Virus record (IMG/VR): IMGVR_UViG_3300042465_005589
Coordinates: 248,001-312,000 of that record
DNA length: 64,000 bases
Reading direction: 5' to 3' (one strand)
Position numbers and translations under genes: made by a program. Below, in pieces: positions 3,441 to 64,000 of the stretch (its first letter is position 1; every line of letters starts with the position of its first letter). The notes below the pieces were generated by a model. It was not told where the DNA came from. It saw nothing but the letters and a program-made list of their open reading frames with translations, and did no database searches.

Positions 3441-4355
3441 TTAAAACTTATATTTCTTAATCTCACTTATCGGATTAACCCCTTTTTCAATAAAATCTTT
3501 TAATAATTGATTAATTTTAAGATAAGTAACATTATCAATAGTAGTATGTGTAGTATTTTTTATTTCAATGTTAACATAATTCACATTATTTGACGATGTT
3601 GATTTACCCCCTGAATTTGTAAAAAATATGAACTCATCACTATATTCAGTTGAAGTTAAATTAATTAATCTATTTATATTTGTAGGGATATTATAGTCAA
3701 CATTGTTTTCTTTTTTATTTGCCGGGTCAATTAAAATAGTCAAATCAATATTAATTTTTTGTTTTTTCAATTCACTTACAACTTGAATAACATTGTATCC
3801 TCCAATACTATGTCCAACCATAATAACTTTCCCATTTGGATTAAATAACTTGTAGTAATAAATCACACTATAAACATCTTCAGGTGTTAAGTTTTCACTA
3901 TGTGAACTCACATAAGTTAAAACTTGAGTATCTTTTGTAAAATTTTTTGATTTAATATATCCCAACCCATTTTCATCACGAGAATTTGTAACGTCAACTT
4001 GAGTTTTGTTTTTAGAGATAAAATCCTTAAATGGATTATTAACCCCTTGTATCACTATAATTAAATTATTTGTAGTTTTTTTAACATGTTCTATGTTATA
4101 TTTTTTAGTCTCAGATTGTCTATCACTATAAATGTTTGTAGATTCATACCCAATCAAGGTCATAAAAAAAATACACATTAATGTTGGGAATATTTTAATA
4201 TTTGTTTTGTTTTTAATAACAATTATTAAATAATGTATAAAAAATGGTATTCCTATCCAAAGTCTAATATGTAAAATTAAACTAATAACGATAGCTTGAA
4301 TCCAAGTACCATTATTACCTTTTATAGCGTCTAAAAATTGTAAAATATAATCCAT
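3441..4355 (-). CDS. Membrane-anchored alpha/beta hydrolase (lipase/esterase-like)
   Basis: GHSIG nucleophile elbow (GxSxG), ILIDPA, late His (THTTID); two to three N-terminal hydrophobic segments. Confidence 0.7.
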   Translation of the reverse strand: MDYILQFLDAIKGNNGTWIQAIVISLILHIRLWIGIPFFIHYLIIVIKNKTNIKIFPTLMCIFFMTLIGYESTNIYSDRQSETKKYNIEHVKKTTNNLIIVIQGVNNPFKDFISKNKTQVDVTNSRDENGLGYIKSKNFTKDTQVLTYVSSHSENLTPEDVYSVIYYYKLFNPNGKVIMVGHSIGGYNVIQVVSELKKQKINIDLTILIDPANKKENNVDYNIPTNINRLINLTSTEYSDEFIFFTNSGGKSTSSNNVNYVNIEIKNTTHTTIDNVTYLKINQLLKDFIEKGVNPISEIKKYKF

Positions 4356-40429: not shown

Positions 40430-42205
40430 TTGGAAAACAATACATCTGAAAATTCTAATTTAACAATAGAACAACGAGCAATATCTATCCTTGAAACTTA
40501 TCAGGGGGCGAATAACTATATCCTAAAATTAAAACACCAAAAGGAAACTAATAAAAGATTCTTCCCAACTCGGGCACAATCTGACTACATTATGAATTTT
40601 AATGAAGTAACTCCTAAGGTTGCAAAAAGATGGGTTGATTTAGACCCTTACTTCGCTAAAAAAATTGCTGATGAAAAATTATTAATTAAAATCCCTGAAC
40701 AGATATGGGTGGAAAAGTTATTAGTTGAGAAAGAAAAATCCTATCATGTTTGGGGAAAAGTGTTAGAATCCGAGACAATCCACGATTTTTGGTTACCAAA
40801 AGGAGCTTTGATTAAAACACACACAATAAAGAATATTGTTGTGGATTATTCAAAATACTCCAATAGACCACCGTTAGAACATCAAAAAGAAGCTATTGAA
40901 AAACTTGCTGGGTCTAAAAGGTTTATCCTTGCCGATGATATGGGATTGGGTAAGACTACCGCAACCATTATTGCTGCTTTAGAGACAGGTGCGAAGAAAA
41001 TACTAATAGTTTGTCCGGCATCTCTGAAGATTAACTGGCAAAGAGAAATTGAGAACTACACCGATAGAAGTGTTTACATCTCCGAAGGTAAGAATTTCTC
41101 AATAGAACACGATTTTGTGATTATTAATTACGATATTCTTAAAAACTTCTATGATTTAAAAAGTAAAACAGAATCTTTAATCTCACAAGGAAACTTTGAT
41201 TTAATTATTTTGGATGAGGCACATTATGTTAGTAATGGACAAGCAGCAAGAACCAAACTTGTTAATAGTTTCTCTAAAAGTTGTGAAAGAGTGTGGTTAT
41301 TAACCGGAACACCGATGACTAACCGACCGATGAATTATTTCAATCTATTGGCACTTATTGAAAGTCCGGTGGCTCAGAATTGGATGGCTTACGCTATTAG
41401 ATATTGTCAAGGTTATCAATTCACAGCGGGAACTCGTAAGATATGGAACGTAACCGGAGCTTCTAACTTAGAAGAATTGAGAGACAGAACATCAAGACAA
41501 GTTTTACGTAGATTAAAAACGGAAGTTTTAGATTTACCTGAGAAAATTATTACACCGGTTTATCTAAGGTTAAAGTCAAAACTTTATGAAGGGTTGATGG
41601 GAGAATACTATGATTGGTACAATAAAAACCCCGATGAGTCAACATCTCTAACAGTTCAGTTCAGTAAATTAATGAAGGTTCGTCAAGTGATTGCTGAAGA
41701 AAAAATTAAAGATACCATAGAATTAGCTGAGAATATTTTGGAACAAGATAAAAAAGTTATCATCTTTACCAACTTTACTGAGACATTAAACAGAATTGCC
41801 GACCATTTTGGAAAACAAGCGGTGAGATTAGATGGTTCAACATCAAAACCTCAACGACAATATGCGGTTGACCAATTCCAAGACAACGAAAAGATTAAAG
41901 TATTTGTTGGAAACGTAAAAGCCGCTGGTGTTGGAATCACACTAACCGCAGCCGAAGCTGTAATCATTAATGACCTATCATTTGTTCCGGGTGATTTAGC
42001 ACAAGCGGAAGACCGAGCATACAGATATGGACAGAAAAATTCGGTGTCAGTTTACTACCCAATATTTGATAACTCAATAGAAGGAATCATCTACGATATG
42101 GTAAATCAAAAGAAACAAAATATTGGAACCGTGATGGGGGACAACATCTCTGAAAGAGGAGATTTTATCGGAGAACTTATGAATAAGATAAACAATCGGG
42201 GATAA
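40430..42205 (+). CDS. SNF2-family helicase/translocase (SMARCAL1/HARP-like)
   Basis: LADDMGLGKT, VCPASLKINW, DEAH, LTGTP, GVGITLT, QAEDRAYRYGQ; TTG start. Confidence 0.92.
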   Translation: MENNTSENSNLTIEQRAISILETYQGANNYILKLKHQKETNKRFFPTRAQSDYIMNFNEVTPKVAKRWVDLDPYFAKKIADEKLLIKIPEQIWVEKLLVEKEKSYHVWGKVLESETIHDFWLPKGALIKTHTIKNIVVDYSKYSNRPPLEHQKEAIEKLAGSKRFILADDMGLGKTTATIIAALETGAKKILIVCPASLKINWQREIENYTDRSVYISEGKNFSIEHDFVIINYDILKNFYDLKSKTESLISQGNFDLIILDEAHYVSNGQAARTKLVNSFSKSCERVWLLTGTPMTNRPMNYFNLLALIESPVAQNWMAYAIRYCQGYQFTAGTRKIWNVTGASNLEELRDRTSRQVLRRLKTEVLDLPEKIITPVYLRLKSKLYEGLMGEYYDWYNKNPDESTSLTVQFSKLMKVRQVIAEEKIKDTIELAENILEQDKKVIIFTNFTETLNRIADHFGKQAVRLDGSTSKPQRQYAVDQFQDNEKIKVFVGNVKAAGVGITLTAAEAVIINDLSFVPGDLAQAEDRAYRYGQKNSVSVYYPIFDNSIEGIIYDMVNQKKQNIGTVMGDNISERGDFIGELMNKINNRG

Positions 42206-44760: not shown

Positions 44761-47550
44761 TTAATTAATATGTTCTTCCCAACCAGGTTCCGCTAACTCA
44801 TAAATGTATTCAGAACTAACACCAACTCTATCCCAAAACTTTAATTCTAAGTCGGTTATTGTTAACAAGTCCTCAATTGTGTCTTGGTCACCCTCTTTAT
44901 TTGGAACCCCACCAATTAACTCACACTGAGTTTTAGTAAAGAATCCTCTTTCTTCAGGGTTAGCAATTAACAAACTTTCTCTTAATTCTTTATTGAAAAC
45001 AATCAACAATGGTTCAACCTTTTTATTAAATGTTGAGATTGCTCTTGGAACATTATATTCTCCGGTCAAATCAGGATTATTTTCTATTTCAGTTTGGTCT
45101 AACATATAACAATTAAGTTGAATTGTTGAGGTAGATTTATCTTCGGGTTCTACACCATTTACTGATGTAAACAAATCTAACGCTTTTTTAGTATAATTGT
45201 TTTTAGTAATTTTTTGAACATCCCCGTGAGACGCTTTAACCCCATTATTAACATAACTAATTACATCACCTAATGAAACTTTTAAATCGTGTTTGATGGC
45301 CAATTCCATATGAGCCATTCTACTCATTAACGAACCAGCTTTAGTTTTCATCCCACATCTTTTCTTATAATCTTCGACAGACAATTTAACTCTTGCTCTT
45401 TGAGCGATTTGTTTTAATGGTATTTGTTGGTCGTATATTCTTTGGTGATATTCAAAATACCATTCAACAAATTCCTGACCTTTTCCTTCCAATAATAATC
45501 TCACCCCTTTATCTAAAAACACCTCAATATACAGTGGCAATTTTTTAGACTTAATTGAATTTCCGGTTAATTTAATTTTACCGTTAGATTCCATTGTTGC
45601 GTAATTCTTTCTACTTAAATTAATACAAGAATCCCAAGTTCCATCACAATCTAACCCCATCTCACCTTTCATAAACAAATCGTTGTATTCTGCGGTGTCT
45701 GCGTAATAACCTCTATATTCTTGACCCTCTTTAACTAACCAATTTAATCCTTTTCCAATATAAACTCTATCTTCAACACCGCCTTCAGGTAAACTAAAGT
45801 TGACACCATCCGTATCAAGTACCAAAGGTGTATATCCTCTCTTAACAAAGTATTTCACCATCTGACGAAGATATTGTCTTCCGGTACAAGTAATTCTTTC
45901 TCCACTATTCATTTCGCCCCACTCATAAACGTGTGGTGCCGATAATCCACCAAACATAGAGTTAATAAAGATTTTTAATGGTAATTGTTTTCTATCATAT
46001 GAAAGTGATTTTTTAGAATCAGTTGACTTATACTCAGACGCCAAGTTTTTATACATAATACGAGCGTTACGGAAATAAGTTAACATTCCTTTCATTCCAC
46101 CCATAACATCACACTCAGGGAACACGTCGTGAACTAACTGAATAGATGGGTATAGGGAAGAGTAATCGAGTTTTAGTACGTTGGTAGAGTAACCTACCTT
46201 AAGTAGTCTTGAAAGTCCTCCTACGAAGTCTGTCTTCTCTTCTTTTGCGGGAATAGCCAAATTGTTCTTGAATGACCAAGCTAACATAATCATTCTCCAT
46301 AGAGTTGCGGTTCCCATAGTCGAAACTCTTTCATAGGTTGTTGGTACCATCGATGCTAAAAGAAACGTTCCCTGATTGAATTCATCATCCACTGTTAACG
46401 TTTCCTCTAAATCGTCATCAAGATATCTCTCCACAACATTATCCCCTGTTACTTTAATATATTTTCCGGGAAATCTTGTGTCTAAGTTATTAAAGTCCGG
46501 ATTGTCGGCTTTCTTATATTTTCCATTTTCAACATTTAACCAATACTCCTCTTTTTTAGCATACATTGGTCCAATTTCTAAGTGGTCAATATAAACTCGG
46601 TCGGGAGCTTCCGCTTTAATGTATTGAGTAATATATTTAAGACCTGCTGACTTAATACTTGAATTAATCGCCTGAGCTCTACGAACGGAGTGAATAATAT
46701 CTATAATGTTATAACCCCATAATTGAGTTTGTGAGAATCTCTCCACCTCATTAGCAAGTTTTAACATACCATCCTTTTGAGATATAGGTCTTGCCGGGTT
46801 TAGTGATTTAGCAATCTTTTTGATGTCTAAGTTAAGAGCTTTACATCTCTCGAATATCCAAAACCAGTCAAAGTTCGCTGAATTATATCCACCGATGATA
46901 GATGGTTTAAGTTCGTCAATAATGTTGAAGAACTCCACCAAACCTCTTCGTTCTTGGTCTTCGTCGGCACACTCAATAACTTTTTGATATCCTTTATTTG
47001 TTTTGATTCCAATCATAAATATACGACCATCTTTAGGTTCTAAAGCGGTCGTCTCCAAGTCAAATCCGAGTCGGGTGATGTCGTTATACTCTTCATATCC
47101 TTTGAATAATCTTTTTTCTCTTGAAATAAGGAATTGTTCTACCGGTGGAAGTACCGTTAATTTACCTTTTGTTTTTTCTCCCCACGGGTCTACACCACCA
47201 TCTCTGAAGAATTGGATAAGTGAACGATACCCTTTCATTGACTTAACCATAAACTTAAGACCTTTTTCTAATCTCTCATTACCTTTGGTTTCTAATTTCT
47301 CAATGATGATACCATGTTTCTTCATCGCCTCTTTTTGTTGGTCTTTAGATTTTGAATAAAAATTCAAATCTCTTAAATCCCCAACCCAAGCAAATGCCGT
47401 AAATGTGTCTTTTTTGATTATCTTTCCCTGACCAGGGATTTCTTTAATTTTGTAGATAGCGTCTGACGCGTAATCATACTCGATAGCAACGATGTGCTCT
47501 TCAGGGTCATTCCCCTCAAGGAATGCTTTAATTTCTTCTTGTGTTACCAT
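44761..47550 (-). CDS. Family B DNA polymerase with 3'-5' exonuclease
   Basis: FDLET, GYNSANFD, DYSSLYPSI, KIFINSMFG, DTDG, KNYA motifs. Confidence 0.95.
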   Translation of the reverse strand: MVTQEEIKAFLEGNDPEEHIVAIEYDYASDAIYKIKEIPGQGKIIKKDTFTAFAWVGDLRDLNFYSKSKDQQKEAMKKHGIIIEKLETKGNERLEKGLKFMVKSMKGYRSLIQFFRDGGVDPWGEKTKGKLTVLPPVEQFLISREKRLFKGYEEYNDITRLGFDLETTALEPKDGRIFMIGIKTNKGYQKVIECADEDQERRGLVEFFNIIDELKPSIIGGYNSANFDWFWIFERCKALNLDIKKIAKSLNPARPISQKDGMLKLANEVERFSQTQLWGYNIIDIIHSVRRAQAINSSIKSAGLKYITQYIKAEAPDRVYIDHLEIGPMYAKKEEYWLNVENGKYKKADNPDFNNLDTRFPGKYIKVTGDNVVERYLDDDLEETLTVDDEFNQGTFLLASMVPTTYERVSTMGTATLWRMIMLAWSFKNNLAIPAKEEKTDFVGGLSRLLKVGYSTNVLKLDYSSLYPSIQLVHDVFPECDVMGGMKGMLTYFRNARIMYKNLASEYKSTDSKKSLSYDRKQLPLKIFINSMFGGLSAPHVYEWGEMNSGERITCTGRQYLRQMVKYFVKRGYTPLVLDTDGVNFSLPEGGVEDRVYIGKGLNWLVKEGQEYRGYYADTAEYNDLFMKGEMGLDCDGTWDSCINLSRKNYATMESNGKIKLTGNSIKSKKLPLYIEVFLDKGVRLLLEGKGQEFVEWYFEYHQRIYDQQIPLKQIAQRARVKLSVEDYKKRCGMKTKAGSLMSRMAHMELAIKHDLKVSLGDVISYVNNGVKASHGDVQKITKNNYTKKALDLFTSVNGVEPEDKSTSTIQLNCYMLDQTEIENNPDLTGEYNVPRAISTFNKKVEPLLIVFNKELRESLLIANPEERGFFTKTQCELIGGVPNKEGDQDTIEDLLTITDLELKFWDRVGVSSEYIYELAEPGWEEHIN

Positions 47551-55632: not shown

Positions 55633-58600
55633 ATGTCGTTAAAGATTAACCATTACGATTTTATTGAAATTGGTACGTCAGATTTTGATACTTTAATTGA
55701 AACCTCCAATGACAATACTGTCGGTATTAGTATTGAACCTATAAAATATTACATAAATAGATTACCTGATAAACAGAATATTATTAAAGTCCAAGCGGCA
55801 TTATCAACAACAGATGGTGAAGTCGATGTGTACTATATTGAAGATTCTAAAATAGAAGAGAATAACTTACCTTGGTGGGTTAGAGGAAGTAACTCAATAA
55901 ATAATCCTCACCCTTTTGCTATTAAAGAATTAGGTGAAGAATTATACAATAGTTTGGTAACTATTGAAAAAGTTCCAACAATTAGTTGGGAAACATTAAT
56001 TAAAAGATATGATGTTGGTTCAATCGGTTATCTAAAGATTGATACTGAAGGTCACGACCATATCATCTTCAGAGATTTTTTAAACTATTGTAAAGAACAT
56101 TCATTTCCAATCCCAAACAAAATAACACTAGAATATCACGATGGTGTGTCAAACAAAGTTGAGATTGATAAATTAATATCGGAATTACCTGAATATCAAA
56201 TTATCAAACACATTAGTGATATTACATTAATGAAACCTCTAATACCGAGAGTAATACATCAAACATATAAAACTAATGATTTACCAACAGAAATAAGTGA
56301 GGTAGTTCAAAGGTTAAAAGATATGAATCCAACTTTTGAGTATAAATTCTACAACGATAACGATTGTGTTGAATTTATTAAAGAAAATTATGATGAAGAA
56401 ACTCTTAATCTTTATTTAAGTATTAACCCAAATTATGGGTCGGCTAAATCTGATTTTTTTAGATACCTTTTAATGTATAAAGTTGGTGGTGTTTATTTGG
56501 ATATTAAAAGTTGTACTACTAAACCTTTGGAAGAAGTTTTATTACCAACCGATGAATATCTATTAACTCATTGGGAAGGATTGGATTGGGCAGATGAATT
56601 AAAATATTATTTTGGCGAATTTCAAAATTGGCATATTATCTGTAAACCAAATCACCCATTTTTAAAAAGGGTAATTGAAATTGTTAAAGACAATATTAAA
56701 AATTATATTGGTGGGTCGGATAAATATTCTGTGTTAAGATTGACAGGTCCAATCGCTTATAGTAAAGGAATTATTGAACTTATATCTCAACATAAGAAAA
56801 ATAGTGTTGATTCACCCGTTAGAGAATTTTTATTAGAAAACGAGATTGGGTTACAATATATGTCAACCACAATACATCATCATAATCTAATTGATAGTTC
56901 GTATTCAAAAAGAGAACCTTTAATTTTAAAAGATAAGGTTGAGAAATCATATCTATTATATGCAACCGAAAACTATTTGGATGTTGCAAAGATGTGTATT
57001 AAATCAATCCGAGAATATAGTGATTTACCAATTTTCTTATATCTTATTAATTCTAATAAAGTTGTGGATATTAAAGATGTTGCAACCATAAATTGGAATG
57101 TAGAATTAGTTGATGATAATTCTGATAGATACATTCAAGAGGGTGACAATTTTTACATTAATAGAACCAATAAAACGATTTATAACATCTTAATACAAAA
57201 ACCATTAATCACTAAAGACGTTTTATCTAAATACACTAAAACGGTTGCATTTATTGATTGTGATTCAATTGCAACACCATATGTTGATAGAATCTTTGAC
57301 TTATACGATAATGATAAAGATTACCCTTATTTTGTTGAAGGGATTTATGATTTTCTACACGTAGGTGAACGAGGTGGTGCTATGACTAGAGATGATATGT
57401 CAACCACGTTGGAACATCCGGCGTGTGAATTATTTAATGTTAATCAGTATGTTAGAGAAAAATACCGACAAACAGGTTATTATGTTGCAAATGAAAAATG
57501 TATTGATTTTTTATACGAATGGTATCAAATGTGTTCTCACCCTGAAGTATTAAATAATATACCATATTATGCGGCATATAATGAGGAGACCATCCTAAAT
57601 GTGTTATTGTGGAAAAAATTAATATTTGATGGATTACCTTACATTTACGCTAACGGAAATTTAGAATTGATTGATAATATCTATTCAAACTACAATATTA
57701 GTGAAGAAAGTTTATGGATTAAGATTCCAAATAAGAAAGATGATTTGTTATTTATTCACGGAGAAAAGAACATTTTAGAAATGGGTAAAATAATATCAAA
57801 AATTAAAAACCATAATAAAGAAAAAATTAAAGTATTATTCTTGGCACCACATCTGTCAACCGGAGGGATGCCATCATTCCTATTAAAACGAATCGAATCG
57901 TTATTAGAATATTATAAAGATAAAACGGAATTATTTGTTGTGGAATATTCTAACCATAGTGACCACTATGTGGTTCAAAAAAATAGAATTAAAAAATTAA
58001 TACCTCCATCACATTTTTGGACGTTAGGTGAAGATAAAAACGAATTAAAGAAAATTATTGAGGAAAATTATTTTGACATAATTCACTTGGATGAAATGAT
58101 TGAAGATTTTGATGCTCATAATAAATTATCAAATGAGTTAATGAATTTCATTTATAAAAATGACCGAACTTGGAGAGTAGTGGAAACTTGTCATAACGTT
58201 GTATTCCAACCGGAAAAAGATAAAGTGTTTCATCCTGAAGCATACGCTTATTGTTCACCATTTCATAAAGAATCAACATTCTTGAATATGCCATCGTATG
58301 GTGAAGTAATTGAATTTCCGTATAACCCTACAATTGTAATAGATAAAGAAAGTAATAAAGAAAAATTAGGTTTAGACCCAAATAAAATTCACATTATAAA
58401 TGTTGGATTATGGACACCAGGTAAAAATCAAGAAGAAGGTGTTGAGATTGCAAAATTAGTTGAGGGTATTCACCCTGAATTAGAATTCCATTTCATTGGG
58501 AATCAAGCACCTAACTTTCAAGATTATTGGATACCAATTATGAAAGATTTACCATCAAACGTTAAAGTATGGGGGGAGAAAGATAATGTTAGTGATTTTA

Positions 58601-59976
58601 TGTGTGCCGCTGATGTATTGATGTTTAACTCAACTTGGGAATGTAATCCGTTAGTATTAAGAGAAGGTATTTCTTATGGATTAAAAATTTTAGCAAGAAA
58701 CTTACCTCAATATATGGATATGTTTACACCTTATATAACACAATTGTCAGGTGATATTTTTGACATGAAAAATCAACTTTTAGATTTAATTAAAGATGAA
58801 AGTTATTACGAATTCCCAACATATAGAACAAAAGAATTTGCTGAAAAAAATTACGAGTTATACCAAAAAATATTAAACGAACCAATTAAAAAACAAACCA
58901 TGATAGATAATGAAGTACAAATATTCCAACATTTTGTTAAAGAACCATTTTTAGAAATAAAAGGAACTGGAGACAAAGATTACAATGTTAAATTCTTTGA
59001 TGAAGAAGGTATTTGTCATTATGAGAATACCATAAAACCAAATCATTGGGTTAAATTAAATAGAAGTTATTACACCAAATGGAGAGCAGTTGTTACTCGA
59101 GATAATGAGGTAATTTATGATAACACTATGGATTTAACAAATAAAAGAGTTTACATATCTTTCGATAGTAAATCTTTAGGTGACTCGATTGCTTGGATTC
59201 CTTATGTTTTAGAATTTAAAAAGAAACACGATTGTAAAGTTATTGTATCTACATTTTGGAATCATTTATTTGAAAATGAATATCCTGAAATTGAGTTTGT
59301 TGTACCGGGAACGACCGTACATAATCTTTATGCTATGTACACAATCGGATGGTTCTACAATACAGATAAAGAACCTGTATTACCAAACACAATACCATTA
59401 CAACAAACAATTACTAACATATTAGGATTAGAATTTAAAGAGATTAAACCTAATATACACAACACCATTCACCCAAGACCTTATCAAAAGAAATATGTTA
59501 CCATAGCAACTAACTCAACAGCAGGGTGTAAATTTTGGACAAGAGAAGGATGGCAATCACTAATTAACTATCTTCATAATTTAGGATATAAAGTAATAAA
59601 CGTATCCAAAGAAGATAATCCGTTTGAAAATGCAAACAAGATTAAAAACACCTCAATTCATCACACAATGAATGTAATTCACCATAGCGAATTCTTTATC
59701 GGATTATCTAGTGGTTTATCTTGGTTAGCTTGGGCGTTAGGTAAACAAGTTGTAATGATTTCTAACTTTACAAATGAGGAACATGAGTTTATGTTTAATT
59801 GTACTAGAATTGTAAATCATTCTGTTTGTAACGGATGTTGGAATAAACCTGAATTTACCTTTGATAAAGGTGATTGGAATTGGTGTCCTGTTAATAAAGG
59901 AACTGAAAAACAATTTGAATGTCATAAATCGATAACACCGGAAATGGTTATTAATCAAATACAACATTTACTATAA
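55633..59976 (+). CDS. Five-domain enzyme: FkbM methyltransferase + GT32 + GT-A + GT4 + AAH/TibC-like heptosyltransferase
   Basis: FIEIG/LKIDTEGHD; IPRVIHQT/SDFFRY/GGVYLDIK/LTGP; FIDCD; HLSTGG/KNQ/ECNPLVLREG; SLGDSIAW/FIGLSSGLSWLAWA/CNGCW..C..C. Confidence 0.85.
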   Translation: MSLKINHYDFIEIGTSDFDTLIETSNDNTVGISIEPIKYYINRLPDKQNIIKVQAALSTTDGEVDVYYIEDSKIEENNLPWWVRGSNSINNPHPFAIKELGEELYNSLVTIEKVPTISWETLIKRYDVGSIGYLKIDTEGHDHIIFRDFLNYCKEHSFPIPNKITLEYHDGVSNKVEIDKLISELPEYQIIKHISDITLMKPLIPRVIHQTYKTNDLPTEISEVVQRLKDMNPTFEYKFYNDNDCVEFIKENYDEETLNLYLSINPNYGSAKSDFFRYLLMYKVGGVYLDIKSCTTKPLEEVLLPTDEYLLTHWEGLDWADELKYYFGEFQNWHIICKPNHPFLKRVIEIVKDNIKNYIGGSDKYSVLRLTGPIAYSKGIIELISQHKKNSVDSPVREFLLENEIGLQYMSTTIHHHNLIDSSYSKREPLILKDKVEKSYLLYATENYLDVAKMCIKSIREYSDLPIFLYLINSNKVVDIKDVATINWNVELVDDNSDRYIQEGDNFYINRTNKTIYNILIQKPLITKDVLSKYTKTVAFIDCDSIATPYVDRIFDLYDNDKDYPYFVEGIYDFLHVGERGGAMTRDDMSTTLEHPACELFNVNQYVREKYRQTGYYVANEKCIDFLYEWYQMCSHPEVLNNIPYYAAYNEETILNVLLWKKLIFDGLPYIYANGNLELIDNIYSNYNISEESLWIKIPNKKDDLLFIHGEKNILEMGKIISKIKNHNKEKIKVLFLAPHLSTGGMPSFLLKRIESLLEYYKDKTELFVVEYSNHSDHYVVQKNRIKKLIPPSHFWTLGEDKNELKKIIEENYFDIIHLDEMIEDFDAHNKLSNELMNFIYKNDRTWRVVETCHNVVFQPEKDKVFHPEAYAYCSPFHKESTFLNMPSYGEVIEFPYNPTIVIDKESNKEKLGLDPNKIHIINVGLWTPGKNQEEGVEIAKLVEGIHPELEFHFIGNQAPNFQDYWIPIMKDLPSNVKVWGEKDNVSDFMCAADVLMFNSTWECNPLVLREGISYGLKILARNLPQYMDMFTPYITQLSGDIFDMKNQLLDLIKDESYYEFPTYRTKEFAEKNYELYQKILNEPIKKQTMIDNEVQIFQHFVKEPFLEIKGTGDKDYNVKFFDEEGICHYENTIKPNHWVKLNRSYYTKWRAVVTRDNEVIYDNTMDLTNKRVYISFDSKSLGDSIAWIPYVLEFKKKHDCKVIVSTFWNHLFENEYPEIEFVVPGTTVHNLYAMYTIGWFYNTDKEPVLPNTIPLQQTITNILGLEFKEIKPNIHNTIHPRPYQKKYVTIATNSTAGCKFWTREGWQSLINYLHNLGYKVINVSKEDNPFENANKIKNTSIHHTMNVIHHSEFFIGLSSGLSWLAWALGKQVVMISNFTNEEHEFMFNCTRIVNHSVCNGCWNKPEFTFDKGDWNWCPVNKGTEKQFECHKSITPEMVINQIQHLL

Positions 59977-60653
59977 TGGATTATAATAATTTTGATTGGG
60001 GATGGATGGGACAAAGTGAAGAAGGTTTGTTTCATAAAGAACAAATAACTCAAGAAACATTTGTTGATAAAATATATGAAAAGTTTTTTGAAGTTTCTGA
60101 AGGTGATATTGTTTTAGATTTTGGTGCTAGTGTTGGACCATTTACGTATAGTATTTTATCAAAAAAACCAAAACACGTATATTGTCTTGAACCAAGTGAA
60201 TTTGAATTTCCCACATTAGTTAATAATACAGTTGGTCATCCGGTAACACCAATATTGAAGGGTGTCTCAAATACCAACACATATACTGAGGGTAATGACA
60301 TTTATGGTGGTTCAAAACAAATGGAAGGAATTACTTTTAAAAAACTTTGTGAGTTATATAATTTAAAAACCATAGATTTTTTAAAAACAGATTGTGAGGG
60401 TGGTGAATACGATATTTTTAATGATGAGAATTTTGAATTTATTAAAAATAATGTCAAAAAAATCACCGGTGAGTGGCATTTAGGTACACCAATTTTAAAA
60501 GAAAAATTTAAAAAATTCAGAGATACTTACTTACAATACTTTATAAATGTTGAGGTGTACTCAATAGATGGTGTTAATGTAAAATGGAATTTAATGTCTG
60601 ACAATTTTTTAGAACACTATACAGAAATAATAATACACATATATAACGTTTAA
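59976..60653 (+). CDS. FkbM-family methyltransferase
   Basis: VLDFGASVG, CLEP, IDFLKTDCEGGEY, GEWH. Confidence 0.88.
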   Translation: MDYNNFDWGWMGQSEEGLFHKEQITQETFVDKIYEKFFEVSEGDIVLDFGASVGPFTYSILSKKPKHVYCLEPSEFEFPTLVNNTVGHPVTPILKGVSNTNTYTEGNDIYGGSKQMEGITFKKLCELYNLKTIDFLKTDCEGGEYDIFNDENFEFIKNNVKKITGEWHLGTPILKEKFKKFRDTYLQYFINVEVYSIDGVNVKWNLMSDNFLEHYTEIIIHIYNV

Positions 60654-60657
60654 TTAA

Positions 60658-61476
60658 ATGAAACAAATATTTTTTAACTCTTCCCTACCTAGAAGTGGAA
60701 GTACATTAATTCAGAATTTATTAGCTCAAAATCCTGAAATTTACTCAACACCAACATCAGGGTTGGTAGATTTTGTAATCGCTTGTAAAAACAATTACAA
60801 TCACTCACAAGCATTCCAAGCTCAAAATCAAGATGAAATGACCAAAGCCTTTGTCGATTTTTGTCAAGATGGTATGCAAGGTTATTTTAAAAGACTTACT
60901 GATAAACCAATCGTAATCGATAAAAGTCGAGAATGGGGAATCAATTATGGTTTATTGGAAATGCTACAACCAAACCCAAAAATTATTTGTATGGTTAGAG
61001 ATGTTAGAGCTGTCTATAGTTCAATGGAAAAGAATTTTAGAAAAAACCCTCATAGAGAAAATGGGATTCAAAGACCGGCAGAATTAATTGGGACAACCTT
61101 AAACAAACGTGTTGATATTTGGGCTAGTGGTGTTCCTGTTGGTGTTGCAATTGATAGGTTATTAGATACCATTCAACAAGGTATTGCCGAAAAAATGTTA
61201 TTTATTCGTTACGAGGATTTAATGAGTAATCCTGAAGAAGAAATGAGTAGAATATACAATTATTTAGAACTACCATATTATGAAGGACATGACTTTGAGA
61301 ATATATCTCAACTAACTCATGAAGATGATAGAGTACATGGGATATTTGGTGACCACCAATTAAGACCTAAATTTGAAAGAAAACCGGATGATTACATGGA
61401 AGTGTTGGGGTATGAGATATCAATGAACATTAAAAATCATTATAAATGGTTTTATGACTATTTTGGATACGTATAA
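60658..61476 (+). CDS. PAPS-dependent sulfotransferase
   Basis: 5'-PSB SLPRSGSTL, DKS, 3'-PB MVRDVRAVYSS, RYEDL. Confidence 0.9.
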   Translation: MKQIFFNSSLPRSGSTLIQNLLAQNPEIYSTPTSGLVDFVIACKNNYNHSQAFQAQNQDEMTKAFVDFCQDGMQGYFKRLTDKPIVIDKSREWGINYGLLEMLQPNPKIICMVRDVRAVYSSMEKNFRKNPHRENGIQRPAELIGTTLNKRVDIWASGVPVGVAIDRLLDTIQQGIAEKMLFIRYEDLMSNPEEEMSRIYNYLELPYYEGHDFENISQLTHEDDRVHGIFGDHQLRPKFERKPDDYMEVLGYEISMNIKNHYKWFYDYFGYV

Positions 61477-61488
61477 AAAATTTTAATT

Positions 61489-61941
61489 ATGGCAATATAT
61501 TGGTTTACAGGTCAGCCCGGAGCAGGTAAGACCACATTAGCAAAACAACTTAAAGATTATCTACACCCAAGTAATGTAATGCTTGTTGATGGAGATGACA
61601 TTAGAGATGTGTTTCAGAATAAAGATTACTCTGAAAATGGCAGAAGAAAAAATATTGAGAAAGCACAAGACATCTCATTATTTTTAGATTCAAAAGGATT
61701 TGATGTAATAGTTTCATTAGTATCTCCTTATAAAGACCAACGTGATGAATTTAAAAACAAACATAATGTTTTAGAGTTTTACATTCACACCGAAGATATT
61801 AGAGGAAGAGAAGATTATCACGTATCTAACTATGAACCACCAACTGAAAATTTTGTGGATGTGGATACAACAAATGTTATTGAACAAATCTCTATAGGAA
61901 TAATTATAAATAAAATTAATGAATATAAATTAAATGGATAA
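61489..61941 (+). CDS. cysC: Adenylylsulfate (APS) kinase
   Basis: WFTGQPGAGKTT, VDGDDIR, YSENGRRKN, VSLVSPY, YEPP. Confidence 0.9.
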   Translation: MAIYWFTGQPGAGKTTLAKQLKDYLHPSNVMLVDGDDIRDVFQNKDYSENGRRKNIEKAQDISLFLDSKGFDVIVSLVSPYKDQRDEFKNKHNVLEFYIHTEDIRGREDYHVSNYEPPTENFVDVDTTNVIEQISIGIIINKINEYKLNG

Positions 61942-62344
61942 TTGGGAAAGAAAAACACACGTACAAGCAGCATTCGCTTCATCATCGTCAAATAAAAAAT
62001 ATTCAATGTTTGTAGGTAGATGGCAACCGTGGCATCATGGTCATAGAGCATTAATTGACCAACAATTGAATAGAGATAAAAATATCCTACTATGTGTTAG
62101 AGATGTTGAAATTGATGATAAAAATCCGTTTTCAACAGAATGGGTTATTGAAAACTTAAACAAAGAATTAAAAGACCTAATTGATGAAGGAAGATTAGTG
62201 ATTCAGGTTATTCCGGATATAGAAAGTGTTAATATTGGTAGAGGTGTTGGATATGATGTTTATGAACATTTCCCTCCTGAGGATATTAAAAACATTTCTG
62301 CAACAAAAATTAGAGAACAAATGAAAAAAGACGGTAAACTATAA
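61934..62344 (+). CDS. Small HIGH-family nucleotidyltransferase (candidate minimal ATP sulfurylase)
   Basis: GRWQPWHHGH and ISATKIRE; coupled to cysC. Confidence 0.75.
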   Translation: MDNWERKTHVQAAFASSSSNKKYSMFVGRWQPWHHGHRALIDQQLNRDKNILLCVRDVEIDDKNPFSTEWVIENLNKELKDLIDEGRLVIQVIPDIESVNIGRGVGYDVYEHFPPEDIKNISATKIREQMKKDGKL

Positions 62345-62559
62345 TGGTAGAAGTAAAACGACACATAGGTAAAGCCGTTAGTTATAGAATGTTAGGGACA
62401 TTACAAACCTGTATAATCTCATACTTATTTACAGGAAATTTTTTGATTTCAGGTAGTATCGGATTAACAGAATTATGTATAAAACCATTAATATATTTCC
62501 TACACGAAAGAGTGTGGTATAAATGGATAAAGTTTGGATTAAAAGAAAATAAAGAATAA
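62344..62559 (+). CDS. DUF2061-like small membrane protein
   Basis: RHIGKAVSYR...IYFLHERVW signature. Confidence 0.8.
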   Translation: MVEVKRHIGKAVSYRMLGTLQTCIISYLFTGNFLISGSIGLTELCIKPLIYFLHERVWYKWIKFGLKENKE

Positions 62560-62560
62560 T

Positions 62561-62596
62561 ATGAATGTAATTTTTCAAATCAAACTATTTATATAA
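62561..62596 (+). pseudogene. Stranded original 5' end of the GT9 gene
   Basis: ATGAATGTAATTTTTCAAATC (MNVIFQI) versus ATGAATGTAATATTTTCTATA (MNVIFSI) at 63307. Confidence 0.7.
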
Positions 62597-62611
62597 TAAA
62601 ATAAGTTTAAA

Positions 62612-63310
62612 ATGGAAAATAATATTTGTGTTTATTTACATAAAAAACCTAATGGTGATATATTTTATGTGGGAATTGGGACTAATAAAAGACCTTATGA
62701 AAAATTTAGAAAAAATGTATATTGGAAAAATATAACAAATAAATACCCTAATTATATTATTGAAATAATTGAAGAAAATTTAACTTGGGAAGATGCCTGT
62801 ATTATTGAAAAACAATTAATTAGAAAATACGGTAGAAAATGTGATGGTGGTATATTATGTAATATAACTTTAGGTGGTGATGGGGTTTATGGTTTAAAAC
62901 ATTCTCAAGAAACTAAAGAAAAATTAAAAAAATTATCAACCGGAAATAAAAATTGTGTTGGATTTAAACATACTGAAATAACTAAAGTAAATATGAGTAA
63001 ATCTCATTTAGGTAAAATAACACCAAAAGAAGTTAGAGAAAAAATGTCAAAAACTCATTTAGGTAGACCAGGTAGAGAATCAGATAAATTAAATGTTAAA
63101 AAGGCACATATTAAAAATATAGGTAGAGTTCAAAATGAGGATGAAAAAGAAAAAAGAGCCAAAAAATTATGTAAACCAATTGAGGTTAATGGTGTAATAT
63201 ATGAATCAATAAAACAATATTCTGAAATAACTAATATTAACCGAAGTAAAGTTTGGCGAAATTTAAAAGACGAAAAAAATAAAAACTACAAATACATAAA
63301 TAAAAAATGA
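62612..63310 (+). mobile_element. GIY-YIG homing endonuclease with NUMOD3 repeats
   Basis: CVYLH...FYVGIG..R..E..N; repeated KHSQETKEKL / KHTEITKVNMS / EVREKMSK. Confidence 0.88.
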
Positions 63311-64000
63311 ATGTAATATTTTCTATAGAAGGTGGATTAGGAAAATCCATAATGGGTACGGCAGTATTAAAAGCAATAAAAAAACAATATAGTAAAGCTA
63401 ACATAATTGTTGTTAGTAGTTATCCGGATGTCTTTATTGGTAATCCAAACGTTAATAAAGTTTTGACTCACGAAACAATGAGTGGGATATATGAAAAATA
63501 TATCATGGGTAAAGAAGCAAAAGTATTTGTTTCTGACCCATACTCAACTTCAGATTATATTACCGAAGAAAAACATCTAATTCAGTTATGGTGTGAAATG
63601 TATGGTCTAAATTACAATGGTGAAAAACCTGAATTATTTATAAGTAAAGCCGAAAAACAATACTTTGAAGGGTTCTATAAGTTAGATAAACCAATTATGG
63701 TTATTCAACCTCATGGGGGTGCATTTAACCAACCGTTAAAATATAGTTGGACAAGAGATATACCTCAACCAATTATGCAAGACATTATAAATCATTTTGC
63801 AAATGATTACGCTATCTTACACGTTAAACGAGAAGACCAAATTATTTACGAAAATACGTTCCAAGCATTAGATTCATTTAGAAGTATTGCTGTATTATTG
63901 AGTATGGCAACAAAACGATTATTAATCGATAGTAGTGTTATGCACATTGCGACGGCATTAAATTTACCATCAGTGGTGACTTGGGTTGGGACAAATCCGG
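63307..64000 (+). CDS. GT9 (heptosyltransferase-like) glycosyltransferase, truncated at the window edge
   Basis: Not in the track. MNVIFSIEGGLGKSIMGTAVLKAIKKQY..YPDVFIGNPNV...IDSSVMHIATALNLPSVVTWVGTNP. Confidence 0.85.
   Translation, partial: MNVIFSIEGGLGKSIMGTAVLKAIKKQYSKANIIVVSSYPDVFIGNPNVNKVLTHETMSGIYEKYIMGKEAKVFVSDPYSTSDYITEEKHLIQLWCEMYGLNYNGEKPELFISKAEKQYFEGFYKLDKPIMVIQPHGGAFNQPLKYSWTRDIPQPIMQDIINHFANDYAILHVKREDQIIYENTFQALDSFRSIAVLLSMATKRLLIDSSVMHIATALNLPSVVTWVGTNP

What the first reader, a model, noticed from the sequence alone, without database searches (positions are those of the whole stretch)
62561..63330. Homing endonuclease inserted into the GT9 5' end and supplied a recoded replacement start
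MNVIFQI, placed correctly right after DUF2061, dead-ends after 11 codons into a TATTTAT motif and the GIY-YIG gene. The GIY-YIG stop overlaps (ATGA) a second start MNVIFSIEGGLGK. This is a clear footprint of splicing-free invasion that preserves the target gene. It implies the GT9 is under selection and points to the cleavage site.
Basis: seen in the sequence. Interest (0 to 1): 0.62.

Follow-up and report, generated by a model that had tools for sequence, protein, structure and literature searches.

The report
Homing endonuclease carrying a spare gene start
A selfish endonuclease gene has inserted into the first codons of a glycosyltransferase gene of a 318-kb lake phage and keeps that gene working without splicing, because it carries a replacement copy of the gene's start; copies with and without the insert coexist in the same lake sample.

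Summary
An 11-codon dead-end ORF (62561-62596) repeats the start of the GT9-like gene, which restarts at 63307 in an ATGA overlap with the stop of a 232-codon GIY-YIG gene (62612-63310).

All 94 relatives found through GT9 lack the endonuclease and have one continuous start (MNVIFQIDGGLGK in the nearest relatives) immediately after DUF2061. No intron RNA was detected.

New findings:
- The insert is a 746-bp cassette placed after GT9 nucleotide 24. It holds a phage promoter-like TATTTATA box, an I-TevI-like endonuclease gene and a second copy of codons 1-8.
- GT9 nucleotides 12-45 form a mostly synonymous variant tract that co-occurs with the endonuclease in six of the seven lineages examined.
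- The same cassette occurs in at least four GT9 lineages, behind different upstream genes.
- A sister endonuclease clade sits cleanly between the genes, without a stub.
- One lineage keeps only a roughly 50-nt remnant of the endonuclease.
- Copies with and without the insert coexist in one lake metagenome.
- GT9 is under strong purifying selection (dN/dS 0.04-0.10).

Cleavage, target immunity and regulation are inferred, not shown. This is a new phage, 5'-end variant of the gene-end-replacing mobile ORFs known from fungal mitochondria.

The parts
62344..62559 (+). DUF2061 gene, the upstream neighbour. In relatives without the endonuclease its stop is followed within 1-4 nt by the GT9 start.
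   Evidence: PF09834, E 5.6e-19; junctions in L003-L016
62561..62596 (+). Stub: the displaced original GT9 start. Nucleotides 62561-62584 are homologous to GT9 nt 1-24. The ORF then runs into the insert and stops (11 codons plus TAA).
   Evidence: 20-21 of 21 nt identical to the endonuclease-free alleles L003/L006/L007. The pattern occurs twice in the window against 0.03 expected. Homologous stubs occur in L035, L130, L131, L136, L133 and L037.
62585..63330 (+). The inserted cassette (746 bp): leader with TATTTATA, the endonuclease gene, and the replacement copy of GT9 codons 1-8.
   Evidence: Repeat spacing of 746 nt. The junction is shared by seven stub-type alleles. In run X15 an endonuclease-free contig joins 62580 to 63353.
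62586..62593 (+). TATTTATA box 26 nt upstream of the endonuclease start; a promoter-like motif of this phage. It lies in the most conserved block of the non-coding part of the cassette.
   Evidence: Genome-wide, 28 copies lie 18-27 nt upstream of ORF starts, against 7 for the reverse complement, which shows no peak. Seven such copies are in the window. The block CAAATNRAACTATTTAT is near-invariant in seven alleles.
62554..62637 (+). Predicted RNA hairpin in which the stub pairs with the endonuclease start codon and the first approximately 25 nt of its coding sequence. The TATTTATA box lies in the loop. Inferred, not shown.
   Evidence: MFE -16 kcal/mol, z -3.5, 0 of 200 shuffles fold as well. 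Comparable folds in L035, L130 and L133 but not in L131, L136 or L037. The helix is 88% paired across seven alleles, with no significant covariation.
62612..63310 (+). Free-standing I-TevI-like GIY-YIG homing endonuclease gene (232 aa): an N-terminal GIY-YIG domain, NUMOD3 repeats and a C-terminal helix-turn-helix-type DNA-binding region.
   Evidence: phrog_314, E 4e-22; NUMOD3 above cut-off; TIGR01453, E 8e-11. The profile matches I-TevI 1LN0 (catalytic domain) and 1I3J (DNA-binding domain). Y8, Y19, G21, R27, E66 and N84 are conserved. dN/dS is 0.23-0.43.
63307..63310 (+). ATGA overlap: the endonuclease stop is nested in the GT9 start codon, an arrangement compatible with translational coupling.
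   Evidence: Sequence. The same overlap occurs in L035, L037, L131, L136 and L041, but not in L130 or L133.
63307..63351 (+). Replacement GT9 start plus the tract that co-occurs with the endonuclease (GT9 nt 1-45). It differs from endonuclease-free siblings at 13 positions in nt 12-45, with only Q6S, D8E (and N14S against some siblings) changing the protein. It is the candidate immunity variant of the homing site.
   Evidence: 95-100% identical to endonuclease-bearing L035 but 68-77% identical to endonuclease-free siblings over nt 1-60, while the rest of the gene is as close or closer to the endonuclease-free siblings. The same local drop is seen in four sibling pairs, beyond all 58 control pairs in three and matched by only one control pair in the fourth.
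63307..64000 (+). GT9-like glycosyltransferase gene, intact (291 aa; it continues past the window end to 64182 in window numbering).
   Evidence: Full ORF in L001; PF01075 at 23.7 bits against a cut-off of 22. The AlphaFold model (pLDDT 79) matches WaaF 1PSW, GT9 3TOV and WaaC best. dN/dS is 0.04-0.10.

Best explanation
A free-standing, I-TevI-like GIY-YIG homing endonuclease gene sits as a 746-bp cassette inside the first codons of a phage GT9-like glycosyltransferase gene, after nucleotide 24 and directly before the GGLGK codons.

The cassette carries three things:
- its own phage promoter-like TATTTATA box;
- the endonuclease gene;
- at its 3' end, a second copy of GT9 codons 1-8, so the GT9 frame restarts in an ATGA overlap with the endonuclease stop and continues intact.

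The recipient's original codons 1-8 are left behind as a dead-end stub right after DUF2061. No splicing is needed.

Shown by comparison:
- The insertion polarity, the boundaries and the intactness of GT9, which is under purifying selection.
- The endonuclease has a sporadic distribution.
- A mostly synonymous variant tract (GT9 nt 12-45) co-occurs with the endonuclease.
- The same cassette is present in several GT9 lineages behind different upstream genes.
- A deletion remnant survives in one lineage.
- Copies with and without the insert coexist in one sample.

Inferred:
- The enzyme cuts the uninterrupted allele in or near nt 1-45.
- The break is repaired from an endonuclease-bearing genome (homing). 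The stub serves as the left homology arm and the GT9 body as the right one, so the element behaves like an intron-type insertion that does not depend on the upstream gene.
- The variant tract, together with the split of the site at nt 24/25, protects alleles that carry the endonuclease.
- The stub/promoter region may also gate endonuclease expression, as in T4, through a hairpin that hides the start codon in read-through transcripts.
For: Anatomy.

Continuous start in relatives:
- All 14 viral relatives lack the endonuclease and have DUF2061 abutting GT9. The nearest ones match the stub at 20-21 of 21 nt.
- All 80 metagenomic GT9 loci lack the endonuclease.

Locus specificity: all 11 endonuclease protein clusters that were looked up (54-88% identity) lie immediately 5' of a GT9-like gene.

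The tract that co-occurs with the endonuclease:
- Over GT9 nt 1-60 the window is 95% identical to endonuclease-bearing L035 but 68-77% identical to endonuclease-free siblings. From nt 61 on it is as close or closer to the endonuclease-free siblings, for example 93-98% to L003 over nt 241-600.
- The same 5' drop of 17-24 points appears in four sibling pairs (one member with the endonuclease, one without). The 58 control pairs without the endonuclease have a mean of -0.6 points, an SD of 7.5 and an extreme of -18. Three of the four pairs exceed that extreme; the fourth (-17) is matched by only one control pair.

Portability:
- The stub-type cassette shares the junction block CAAATNRAACTATTTAT. 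It lies behind DUF2061 (window, L035, L133), behind a sulfotransferase (L037, L136), and behind other upstream sequence in L130 and L131, whose neighbour genes were not identified.
- In the window, L130 and L131 the stub and its upstream flank match the local endonuclease-free sibling.
- The right-hand donor tract varies in length; L131 keeps the local type.

Mobility signals:
- Endonuclease presence needs at least 8 changes on the GT9 tree.
- Between the window and L035, synonymous divergence of the endonuclease is 0.25 against 0.83 for GT9.

Loss: L080, L081 and L085 keep about 50 nt of the endonuclease 3' end and the GT9 start type seen in endonuclease-bearing alleles. Their intact sibling is L136.

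Polymorphism in one sample: in run X15 a contig with the endonuclease (depth 14.1) and a contig without it (depth 7.4) coexist. The latter joins 62580 to 63353 through the uninterrupted L003-type sequence.

Enzyme family.

Promoter box.

Hairpin.
Against: - No cleavage, homing or transcript data exist. The target site and the immunity of endonuclease-bearing alleles are inferred from polymorphism only.
- No donor genome with a near-identical endonuclease in a different arrangement was found.
- The root of the endonuclease tree is unreliable, so it is unresolved whether the stub arrangement or the clean intergenic arrangement came first.
- The stub of L035 differs from the local endonuclease-free alleles at 5 of 21 nt, so stubs do not always track the recipient.
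- Some clean-type alleles with the endonuclease keep a CAA (Q) codon 6, and some alleles without it carry S-type codons. No single position therefore separates putatively sensitive from immune alleles.
- A 24-nt left homology arm is short for recombination-dependent repair.
- The hairpin shows no significant covariation and is weak in three of seven alleles.
- Parts of the sporadic distribution could reflect losses and background recombination, not repeated gains.
Confidence: 0.85

Rival explanations
1. The endonuclease is a resident that is no longer mobile. It entered once, is inherited vertically, and its patchy distribution reflects repeated deletion plus ordinary recombination of the phage backbone. 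The divergent GT9 5' tract is merely linked ancestral polymorphism, not an immunity or co-conversion tract.
For: - A deletion remnant exists (L080, L081, L085).
- These phage populations are visibly mosaic: the window's best match alternates between L003 and L006/L007 along GT9.
- The window and L035 differ by about 9% across the endonuclease gene as well.
- The stub arrangement has a single origin on the endonuclease tree.
Against: - The endonuclease is intact and under purifying selection, with all catalytic residues kept.
- Its synonymous divergence between the window and L035 is a third of that of the flanking GT9.
- The same cassette sits in GT9 lineages only 64-70% identical and behind different upstream genes, with the local sibling's flank next to the stub.
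- The right-hand tract length varies between lineages.
- The tract stops at about nt 45 in the window, L035 and L130.
Confidence: 0.1
2. The stub is not only a relic. It has been recruited as a regulatory element of the cassette. As the 5' arm of an RNA hairpin it hides the endonuclease start in read-through operon transcripts, while transcripts from the TATTTATA box escape. It may also act as an operator resembling the homing site, as for I-TevI. This reading adds to the main explanation and does not replace it.
For: - The predicted hairpin has z -3.5, with 0 of 200 shuffles as stable. Similar folds occur in L035, L130 and L133.
- The helix is 88% paired in seven alleles, against 33-61% when the partner is slid.
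- The stub's A/G and U/C variants keep pairing with the invariant 3' arm.
- The stub's 3' end plus the box is the best-conserved non-coding block, even where the stub ATG is lost.
- The T4 precedent has a late promoter inside a hairpin that sequesters the ribosome binding site, and an operator with 15 of 20 nt identical to the homing site (PMC2988022).
Against: - There is no significant covariation.
- Three alleles fold no better than shuffles.
- AT-rich sequence with G-U pairs folds easily.
- The 3' arm is constrained by coding for the GIY motif anyway.
- No transcript ends are known.
Confidence: 0.3
3. The insert is a group I or II intron (or another spliced element) with an intron-encoded endonuclease. 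GT9 would then be expressed from the first ATG after splicing.
For: GIY-YIG enzymes of this type are often intron-encoded. TIGR01453 is named 'group I intron endonuclease'. The stub and the downstream exon could in principle be joined in frame at nt 24/25.
Against: - No Rfam family matches at E up to 1 in 62300-63600, nor at gathering score in the whole window.
- The ORF fills all but 51 nt of the insert, leaving no room for a ribozyme core.
- The insert ends with a complete, conserved second copy of codons 1-8 with its own ATG, which splicing would make pointless.
- In L037 and L133 the stub has lost its ATG while GT9 stays intact.
Confidence: 0.02
4. The repeat of the start is a chance similarity or an assembly chimera of two strains.
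For: The sequence is AT-rich (31% GC) and the repeat is short (15-24 nt).
Against: - The pattern is expected 0.03 times and observed twice.
- The same structure is present in independent assemblies and in 15 runs.
- In run X15 one 840-nt contig spans 62551-63390 with no difference.
- Homologous stubs occur in six other lineages.
Confidence: 0.01

Closest known systems
Mobile endonuclease ORFs (mORFs) of fungal mitochondria that carry a foreign gene end: Allomyces macrogynus atp6; Glomus atp6, atp9 (GIY-YIG), cox2 and nad3; Rhizopus atp9; Mortierella cox2 (PMC3630166)
   Same: An endonuclease ORF sits inside a protein gene together with a duplicate of the displaced gene terminus. The inserted copy is the expressed one and is divergent, mostly at synonymous sites. 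The native copy matches close relatives and is left as a relic. No splicing is involved, and the arrangement is read as horizontal transfer of the element plus the gene end.
   Different: In those cases the 3' (C-terminal) end is replaced and the ORF is often fused in frame to the host gene. Here the 5' end (8 codons) is replaced, in a bacteriophage. The endonuclease is a separate cistron with its own promoter-like box and an ATGA overlap that hands translation on to the host gene.
[quoted passage not shown]
   Same: A mobile insertion brings a second copy of the host gene's 5' part, allowing partial gene replacement by a foreign fragment.
   Different: Those are annotated as introns in mitochondrial genes. 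Here no intron RNA is detectable and the element is a free-standing endonuclease cassette in a phage.
Free-standing seg (GIY-YIG) and mob (HNH) homing endonucleases of T4-like phages, 'intronless homing' (review PMC2988022)
   Same: - A GIY-YIG enzyme lies between conserved genes, is present in some relatives and absent in others, and targets the neighbouring gene.
- Flanking markers are co-converted.
- The element uses either host operon transcription or its own late promoter.
- RNA hairpins hide the start.

The clean-type relatives of this endonuclease (L040, L044, L046, L048) fit this pattern exactly.
   Different: T4 seg and mob genes sit in intergenic DNA without duplicating any part of the neighbour; the review does not use the word 'duplication' at all. 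In the window the insertion point lies inside the coding sequence, and the gene is rescued by a carried replacement start.
Endonuclease insertions that split phage genes: mobE in nrdA of Aeromonas phage Aeh1, mobA in T4 gene 39/60, seg in gene 43 of phage 25 (PMC2988022)
   Same: A free-standing endonuclease sits inside a phage coding region that remains functional without splicing.
   Different: In those cases the gene is cut into two polypeptides that reassemble. Here the upstream piece is only 8 codons, is discarded, and its information is supplied again by the cassette, so the product stays a single full-length protein.
I-TevI (td intron endonuclease of T4)
   Same: - It has the same domain order: a GIY-YIG domain, a linker with NUMOD3-type repeats and a C-terminal DNA-binding domain.
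- A promoter lies next to a sequence resembling the homing site, and a predicted hairpin covers the start.
   Different: Sequence similarity is weak (E 0.0015-0.006). The enzyme here is not intron-encoded. Its cleavage distance, cleavage motif and any repressor function are unknown.

Membership tests
GIY-YIG homing endonucleases (I-TevI-like) | Catalytic core residues of the GIY-YIG fold: Tyr of 'GIY', Tyr-x-Gly of 'YIG', and the conserved Arg, Glu and Asn | tested here: met
   Y8, Y19, G21, R27, E66 and N84 are invariant or nearly so in 27 homologues. The profile aligns residues 4-88 to the I-TevI catalytic domain 1LN0 (E 0.006).
GIY-YIG homing endonucleases (I-TevI-like) | Reaches the curated score of the family models | tested here: inconclusive
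   PF01541 scores 16.9 bits against a cut-off of 22.6, and TIGR01453 scores 42.4 against 56.05 (both below). NUMOD3 PF07460 scores 21.9 against 20.4 (above). phrog_314 'homing endonuclease' matches at E 4e-22.
GIY-YIG homing endonucleases (I-TevI-like) | Separate C-terminal DNA-binding domain joined by a linker | tested here: met
   The profile matches the I-TevI DNA-binding domain 1I3J in two stretches, the NUMOD3-like region and the C-terminal helix-turn-helix region (E 0.0015).
GIY-YIG homing endonucleases (I-TevI-like) | Site-specific double-strand cleavage leaving 2-nt 3' overhangs | not testable with these tools
   Needs purified protein and DNA substrates.
Free-standing (intronless) homing endonuclease gene | Present or absent at one fixed locus among close relatives | tested here: met
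   None of 94 GT9 loci found through GT9 carries it. All 11 endonuclease clusters looked up lie 5' of GT9. Its presence needs at least 8 changes on the GT9 tree. Both alleles occur in run X15.
Free-standing (intronless) homing endonuclease gene | Flanking target-gene sequence is co-inherited with the endonuclease (co-conversion tract or resistant variant of the site) | tested here: met
   GT9 nt 12-45 co-occurs with the endonuclease. A 5' drop of 17-24 points is seen in four sibling pairs, set against 58 control pairs.
Free-standing (intronless) homing endonuclease gene | Not embedded in an intron or intein | tested here: met
   No Rfam match. It is a separate ORF with its own start and stop.
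Free-standing (intronless) homing endonuclease gene | Super-Mendelian inheritance in mixed infection | not testable with these tools
   The host is uncultured and no cross is possible. The lower synonymous divergence of the endonuclease compared with the flanking GT9 (0.25 against 0.83) is only indirect.
Gene-end-replacing mobile ORF (fungal mitochondrial mORF type) | The endonuclease ORF is accompanied by a duplicate of the displaced gene terminus, and the inserted copy is the one continuous with the gene | tested here: met
   The stub at 62561-62584 and the replacement copy at 63307-63330 are 746 nt apart. Only the second copy is continuous with the 291-aa ORF. The arrangement is a mirror image of the fungal cases, replacing the 5' end where they replace the 3' end.
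Gene-end-replacing mobile ORF (fungal mitochondrial mORF type) | The native copy matches close relatives, and the inserted copy is divergent and foreign | tested here: met
   The stub is 20-21 of 21 nt identical to L003, L006 and L007. The replacement copy and the next 21 nt differ from them at 13 positions and match endonuclease-bearing alleles of other lineages.
Glycosyltransferase family 9 (heptosyltransferase-like) | Family model score and GT-B fold resembling WaaC/WaaF | tested here: met
   PF01075 scores 23.7 bits against a cut-off of 22 at full length, but only 4 of 14 homologues match at E 0.01 or better. A sequence profile against the PDB found nothing. The AlphaFold model (pLDDT 79.2) gives Foldseek top hits 1PSW, 3TOV and 2H1H at E 1e-11 to 1e-8. 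It is a distant member; donor and acceptor are unknown.
Group I intron with an intron-encoded endonuclease | Ribozyme core flanking the ORF | tested here: not met
   No match to any Rfam intron model at E up to 1. Non-coding sequence is 51 nt upstream and none downstream.

The most novel reading that the evidence does not exclude
The stub-type element is a self-contained, context-independent 'splicing-free intron'. By carrying a spare copy of the first 8 codons, it is flanked on both sides by GT9 sequence. It can therefore home into any GT9 allele whatever gene lies upstream.

Each time it does so, it overwrites the codons around the conserved GGLGK motif with its own uncleavable version.

The relic start has in addition been recruited as an I-TevI-style control region, consisting of a look-alike of the homing site next to the promoter and a hairpin arm over the start codon.

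If so, this would be the first phage example of the gene-end-replacing strategy known from fungal mitochondria. It would also be a natural system, with both alleles in one lake, in which the whole gain-decay-loss cycle of a homing endonuclease can be followed.
Probability: 0.3. Interest if true: 0.7.

Novelty: new variant of a known kind. Interest (0 to 1): 0.55.

Why it matters
Free-standing homing endonucleases are thought to be confined to intergenic DNA, or else to split the genes they enter, because they lack an intron or intein to repair the damage. This locus shows a third solution in a phage: the element brings a replacement gene start.

The locus offers unusually complete natural evidence:
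- empty sites;
- filled sites in several genetic backgrounds;
- donor tracts of variable length;
- a sister clade in the ordinary intergenic arrangement;
- a decayed remnant;
- both alleles in the same water sample.

It also delimits a 34-nt candidate recognition and immunity tract for a new I-TevI-like enzyme, which is directly testable and of possible use as a monomeric sequence-specific nuclease scaffold.

For annotation, it warns that short dead-end ORFs repeating the start of a downstream gene can mark mobile-element boundaries. It also warns that the first codons of such genes may have a different history from the rest.

Tried and rejected
- **Intron models.** Rfam at E up to 1 on 62300-63600 and at gathering score on the whole window gave nothing. 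The intron reading was rejected.
- **Junction strings.** Exact strings across the stub/insert junction and the endonuclease/GT9 junction were sought in the viral contig collection. No other copy was found; records near the window may be left out of that collection.
- **Paralogues.** The endonuclease has no paralogue in the 318-kb genome.
- **Donor search in viral contigs.** The closest endonuclease relatives in viral contigs are 46% identical or less, and partial. The useful relatives came from the word-index protein search.
- **GT9 against the PDB.** A sequence profile found nothing. The fold search was needed.
- **Sigma-70 and terminator scan.** No more promoter-like sites than in shuffles, and no terminators. 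The phage's own TATTTATA box was found by position analysis instead.
- **CNNNG cleavage motif.** I looked for an I-TevI-type CNNNG motif at a fixed place in endonuclease-free alleles. Candidates at nt 21-25 and nt 31-35 are present in some alleles and absent in others, so no cleavage site can be named from sequence.
- **Single diagnostic position.** Codon 6 (CAA against TCT) separates stub from replacement copy in all stub-type alleles. It does not separate alleles with and without the endonuclease in general.
- **Excision products.** L072 and L077 share nt 1-24 with the replacement copy of L130 but have the local type after nt 24. I considered them as possible excision products. With only three differing positions, this is not interpretable.
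- **Hairpin covariation.** Not significant.
- **RNA evidence.** One metatranscriptome contig covers 63387-63583 at about 94% identity. It is a relative's GT9 and says nothing about splicing or expression of this allele.
- **Not used.** The large representative protein search, complex prediction and any alternative genetic code. Nothing called for them.
- **Operators' limits.** Read laying was given 2,101 letters.
Full report
**Setting.** The window is bases 248001-312000 of a 318,164-bp IMG/VR virus record with 31% G+C, judged complete. The finding lies at the end of a glycan-modification gene block on the + strand:
- a 1447-aa multi-domain protein (FkbM methyltransferase, GT32-like, GT4 and GT9 domains) at 55633-59976;
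- an FkbM methyltransferase;
- a sulfotransferase;
- an APS kinase;
- a cytidylyltransferase / ATP-sulfurylase-like protein;
- DUF2061 (62344-62559);
- then the region in question.

**Observation.** One base after the DUF2061 stop, ATG 62561 opens MNVIFQIKLFI and stops at 62594-62596, with a second TAA directly after it. TATTTATA lies at 62586-62593. A 232-codon ORF runs 62612-63310. Its TGA is nested in ATG 63307 of a 291-codon gene beginning MNVIFSIEGGLGK, which runs past the window end.

The 15-nt start pattern occurs exactly twice in 64 kb against 0.03 expected. The two copies are 746 nt apart.

**Gene identities.** The middle ORF is an I-TevI-like GIY-YIG enzyme:
- It matches phrog_314 'homing endonuclease' at E 4e-22, passes NUMOD3 above cut-off, and matches TIGR01453 at E 8e-11.
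- A profile of 27 homologues matches both the catalytic domain (1LN0) and the DNA-binding domain (1I3J) of I-TevI.
- Y8, Y19, G21, R27, E66 and N84 are conserved.
- Pfam's GIY-YIG model itself stays below threshold.

The downstream gene is a distant GT9. PF01075 scores 23.7 bits against a cut-off of 22. An AlphaFold model (pLDDT 79) has as its best structural matches WaaF, a Veillonella GT9 and WaaC.

- Fourteen viral contigs encode the same GT9 at 70-93% identity. None has the endonuclease, and in each of them DUF2061 abuts GT9.
- The nearest nine read MNVIFQIDGGLGK. At the DNA level they match the window's upstream flank and stub for 20-21 nt, after which the window departs into the insert.
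- Eighty further GT9 loci from metagenomes also lack the endonuclease, and none has two starts.
- Rfam finds no intron.

**Where the endonuclease lives.** The word-index protein search found 26 full-length relatives at 54-99% identity. All 11 clusters whose contigs I fetched lie immediately 5' of a GT9-like gene. There are two arrangements.
- *Clean type* (L040, L044/45, L046/47, L048/49). The endonuclease fills the DUF2061-GT9 spacer exactly, with no stub and no box of its own. This is the classical T4 seg/mob picture.
- *Stub type* (window, L035/36, L130, L131/132, L136, L133-135, L037-39). A copy of GT9 nt 1-24 precedes a near-invariant block, CAAATNRAACTATTTAT, followed by a short A-rich leader, the endonuclease and the working GT9 start.

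Comparing the stubs places the junction after nt 24, directly before GGTGG. In L130 and L131 the stub still reads GAA at codon 8.

On the endonuclease tree one branch (support 91/89) separates the stub type from the clean type. The root is unreliable, so which arrangement came first is open.

**A tract that co-occurs with the endonuclease.**
- Over GT9 nt 1-60 the window is 95% identical to endonuclease-bearing L035 but 68-77% identical to its endonuclease-free siblings. From nt 61 on it is as close or closer to those siblings, for example 93-98% to L003 over nt 241-600.
- The differences are 13 substitutions within nt 12-45. Only Q6S, D8E (and N14S against some siblings) change the protein.
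- The same tract (GGATTAGGAAAATCC or a variant differing at one or two bases) accompanies the endonuclease in L035, L130, L136, L133 and L037, whose GT9 bodies are only 64-93% identical to the window's. L131 keeps its local type, so the right-hand end of the tract varies.
- Across four sibling pairs, the first 48 nt are 17-24 points less similar than the gene body. Fifty-eight control pairs without the endonuclease have a mean of -0.6 points, an SD of 7.5 and an extreme of -18; three of the four pairs exceed that extreme.

This is the pattern expected of co-conversion next to a homing site, or of a resistant site variant linked to its endonuclease. A 34-nt span also fits the size of I-TevI-type sites. 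In I-TevI, a 20-bp primary binding region is centred on the insertion site, with cleavage 23-25 nt away (PMC2988022).

**Portability and turnover.**
- The stub-type cassette lies behind DUF2061 (window, L035, L133), behind a sulfotransferase (L037, L136), and behind other upstream sequence in L130 and L131.
- In the window, L130 and L131, the sequence just upstream of the stub and the stub itself match the local endonuclease-free sibling: L003/L007, L072-L077 and L068 respectively. The gene bodies are 91-92% identical. L035 is an exception, with 5 of 21 stub positions differing.
- Endonuclease presence needs at least 8 changes on a GT9 tree built without the 5' tract.
- Between the window and L035, synonymous divergence is 0.25 in the endonuclease and 0.83 in GT9.
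- L080, L081 and L085 keep only about 50 nt of the endonuclease 3' end between the sulfotransferase and GT9, and retain the GT9 start type seen in endonuclease-bearing alleles. Their intact sibling is L136.
- In lake-water run X15 an 840-nt contig identical to the window (depth 14.1) coexists with a contig (depth 7.4) that joins 62580 to 63353 through the uninterrupted L003-type sequence. Run X16 holds another endonuclease-free allele.
- The endonuclease-bearing stretch is held almost completely in 15 lake-water runs dated 2020-2024.

**Selection.** GT9 has dN/dS of 0.04-0.10, including 0.036 between the two endonuclease-bearing genomes. The endonuclease has dN/dS of 0.23-0.43. Both are maintained, the endonuclease less strictly.

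**Expression signals.** TATTTATA is a positional motif of this phage. Of 130 copies, 28 lie 18-27 nt upstream of ORF starts, whereas the reverse complement shows 7 copies there and no peak. Seven such copies are in the window. The endonuclease's copy is at -26 and lies in the most conserved non-coding block of the cassette. Clean-type relatives lack it.

RNA folding of 62540-62640 pairs the stub with the endonuclease start codon and the following approximately 25 nt, with the box in the loop:
- MFE is -16 kcal/mol, z is -3.5, and 0 of 200 shuffles fold as well.
- L035, L130 and L133 fold similarly; L131, L136 and L037 do not.
- Pairing potential is kept (88% paired against 33-61% when slid), but covariation is not significant.

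The layout recalls T4 I-TevI, segB and Aeh1 mobE. There a late promoter lies inside a hairpin that hides the start in read-through transcripts, and in I-TevI an operator resembles the homing site (PMC2988022). I rate this as a lead only.

**Mechanism proposed.**
- *Shown by comparison:* insertion after nt 24 of an intact gene; a carried replacement of codons 1-8; a variant tract that co-occurs with the endonuclease; the same cassette in several backgrounds; decay; and polymorphism within one sample.
- *Inferred:*
  - The enzyme cuts the uninterrupted allele within or beside nt 1-45.
  - Repair copies the cassette from an endonuclease-bearing genome. The recipient's own nt 1-24 pair with the donor's stub on the left, and the GT9 body pairs on the right.
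  - The recipient thus keeps its own stub and gains a donor tract of variable length.
  - The split of the site at nt 24/25, plus the 13 substitutions, protects alleles carrying the endonuclease.
- *How the first stub arose:* possibly illegitimate joining of a broken GT9 end to sequence upstream of an endonuclease already resident next to a foreign GT9. No donor was found, so this stays open.

**Comparison with known systems.**
- The closest precedents are the mobile endonuclease ORFs of fungal mitochondria. They bring a foreign C-terminal gene end and leave the native one as a relic: Allomyces atp6; Glomus atp6, atp9, cox2 and nad3 (PMC3630166).
- In phages, free-standing endonucleases are described as intergenic, or as splitting genes into two polypeptides (Aeh1 nrdA/mobE, T4 39/60/mobA). 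The T4 review never mentions duplication (PMC2988022).

The present case is therefore a new variant of a known kind: a phage, 5'-end, separate-cistron version of the gene-end-replacing strategy.

**Limits.** Everything about cleavage, immunity, homing and regulation is inferred from sequence comparison. The held paper library is partial, so an earlier phage example cannot be excluded.

Noticed in passing
window 55633-64000 (and on to about 64182): The phage carries a gene block for making a sulfated, methylated glycan. It comprises a 1447-aa fusion of FkbM methyltransferase, GT32-like, GT4 and GT9 domains; a second FkbM methyltransferase; a sulfotransferase; an APS kinase; a cytidylyltransferase / ATP-sulfurylase-like protein; DUF2061; and the GT9-like enzyme. 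The block is conserved in order across many lake and marine viral contigs.
   Followed up: partly
whole genome G000; in the window, for example upstream of the ORF starts at 29205(-), 31138(-), 32081(-), 38389(-), 43196(+), 48495(-) and 62612(+): TATTTATA is a sharply positioned motif. Twenty-eight copies lie 18-27 nt upstream of ORF starts, followed by an A-rich leader. The reverse complement shows no such peak. It is probably a promoter class of this phage; its timing class is unknown.
   Followed up: partly
L080, L081, L085: about 2450-2500: The spacer between the sulfotransferase and GT9 holds about 50 nt matching two pieces of the endonuclease 3' end (L037 endonuclease nt 690-728 and 770-800). 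It is a deletion remnant of the endonuclease, and GT9 still has the start type seen in endonuclease-bearing alleles.
   Followed up: yes
L072/L077 against L074/L101 and L130, GT9 nt 1-48: Endonuclease-free L072 and L077 share nt 1-24 with the replacement copy of endonuclease-bearing L130 but have the local type from nt 25. The switch falls exactly at the stub junction. Only three positions differ, so it may be chance.
   Followed up: partly
window 61934-62344 against L006-L009 about 3156-3548: The cytidylyltransferase / ATP-sulfurylase-like gene is 97% identical to the window's in L003-L005 but only about 50% identical in L006-L009, although the flanking genes are 90-96% identical. A whole-gene allelic replacement has occurred within one phage population. 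L035 and L044 also carry an extra 77-aa ORF before DUF2061 that the window lacks.
   Followed up: no
window 62898-63065 and 63216-63250: The endonuclease gene contains internal direct repeats of 32-35 nt at 71-78% identity, which correspond to the repeated NUMOD3-type modules of its linker.
   Followed up: no
window 16969-23871(-) and 24190-29205(-): Two very large ORFs (2300 and 1671 aa) have no Pfam match at E up to 1e-4. Nearby lie a family B DNA polymerase (44761-47550, - strand) and an SNF2-type helicase (40430-42205). The window has no tRNA genes and no Rfam families.
   Followed up: no
L001 3418-4188(-) (window numbering about 64217-64987, outside the window): The gene convergent on GT9 encodes a 256-aa protein whose N-terminal half is a low-complexity Gly/Asn/Ser-rich repeat. 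It may be a fibre-like protein. No family search was run.
   Followed up: no
window 63387-63583: A contig from a freshwater metatranscriptome library (X17) covers this part of GT9 at about 94% identity, so a relative's GT9 is present in an RNA library. This is not proof of transcription and does not concern the junctions.
   Followed up: partly
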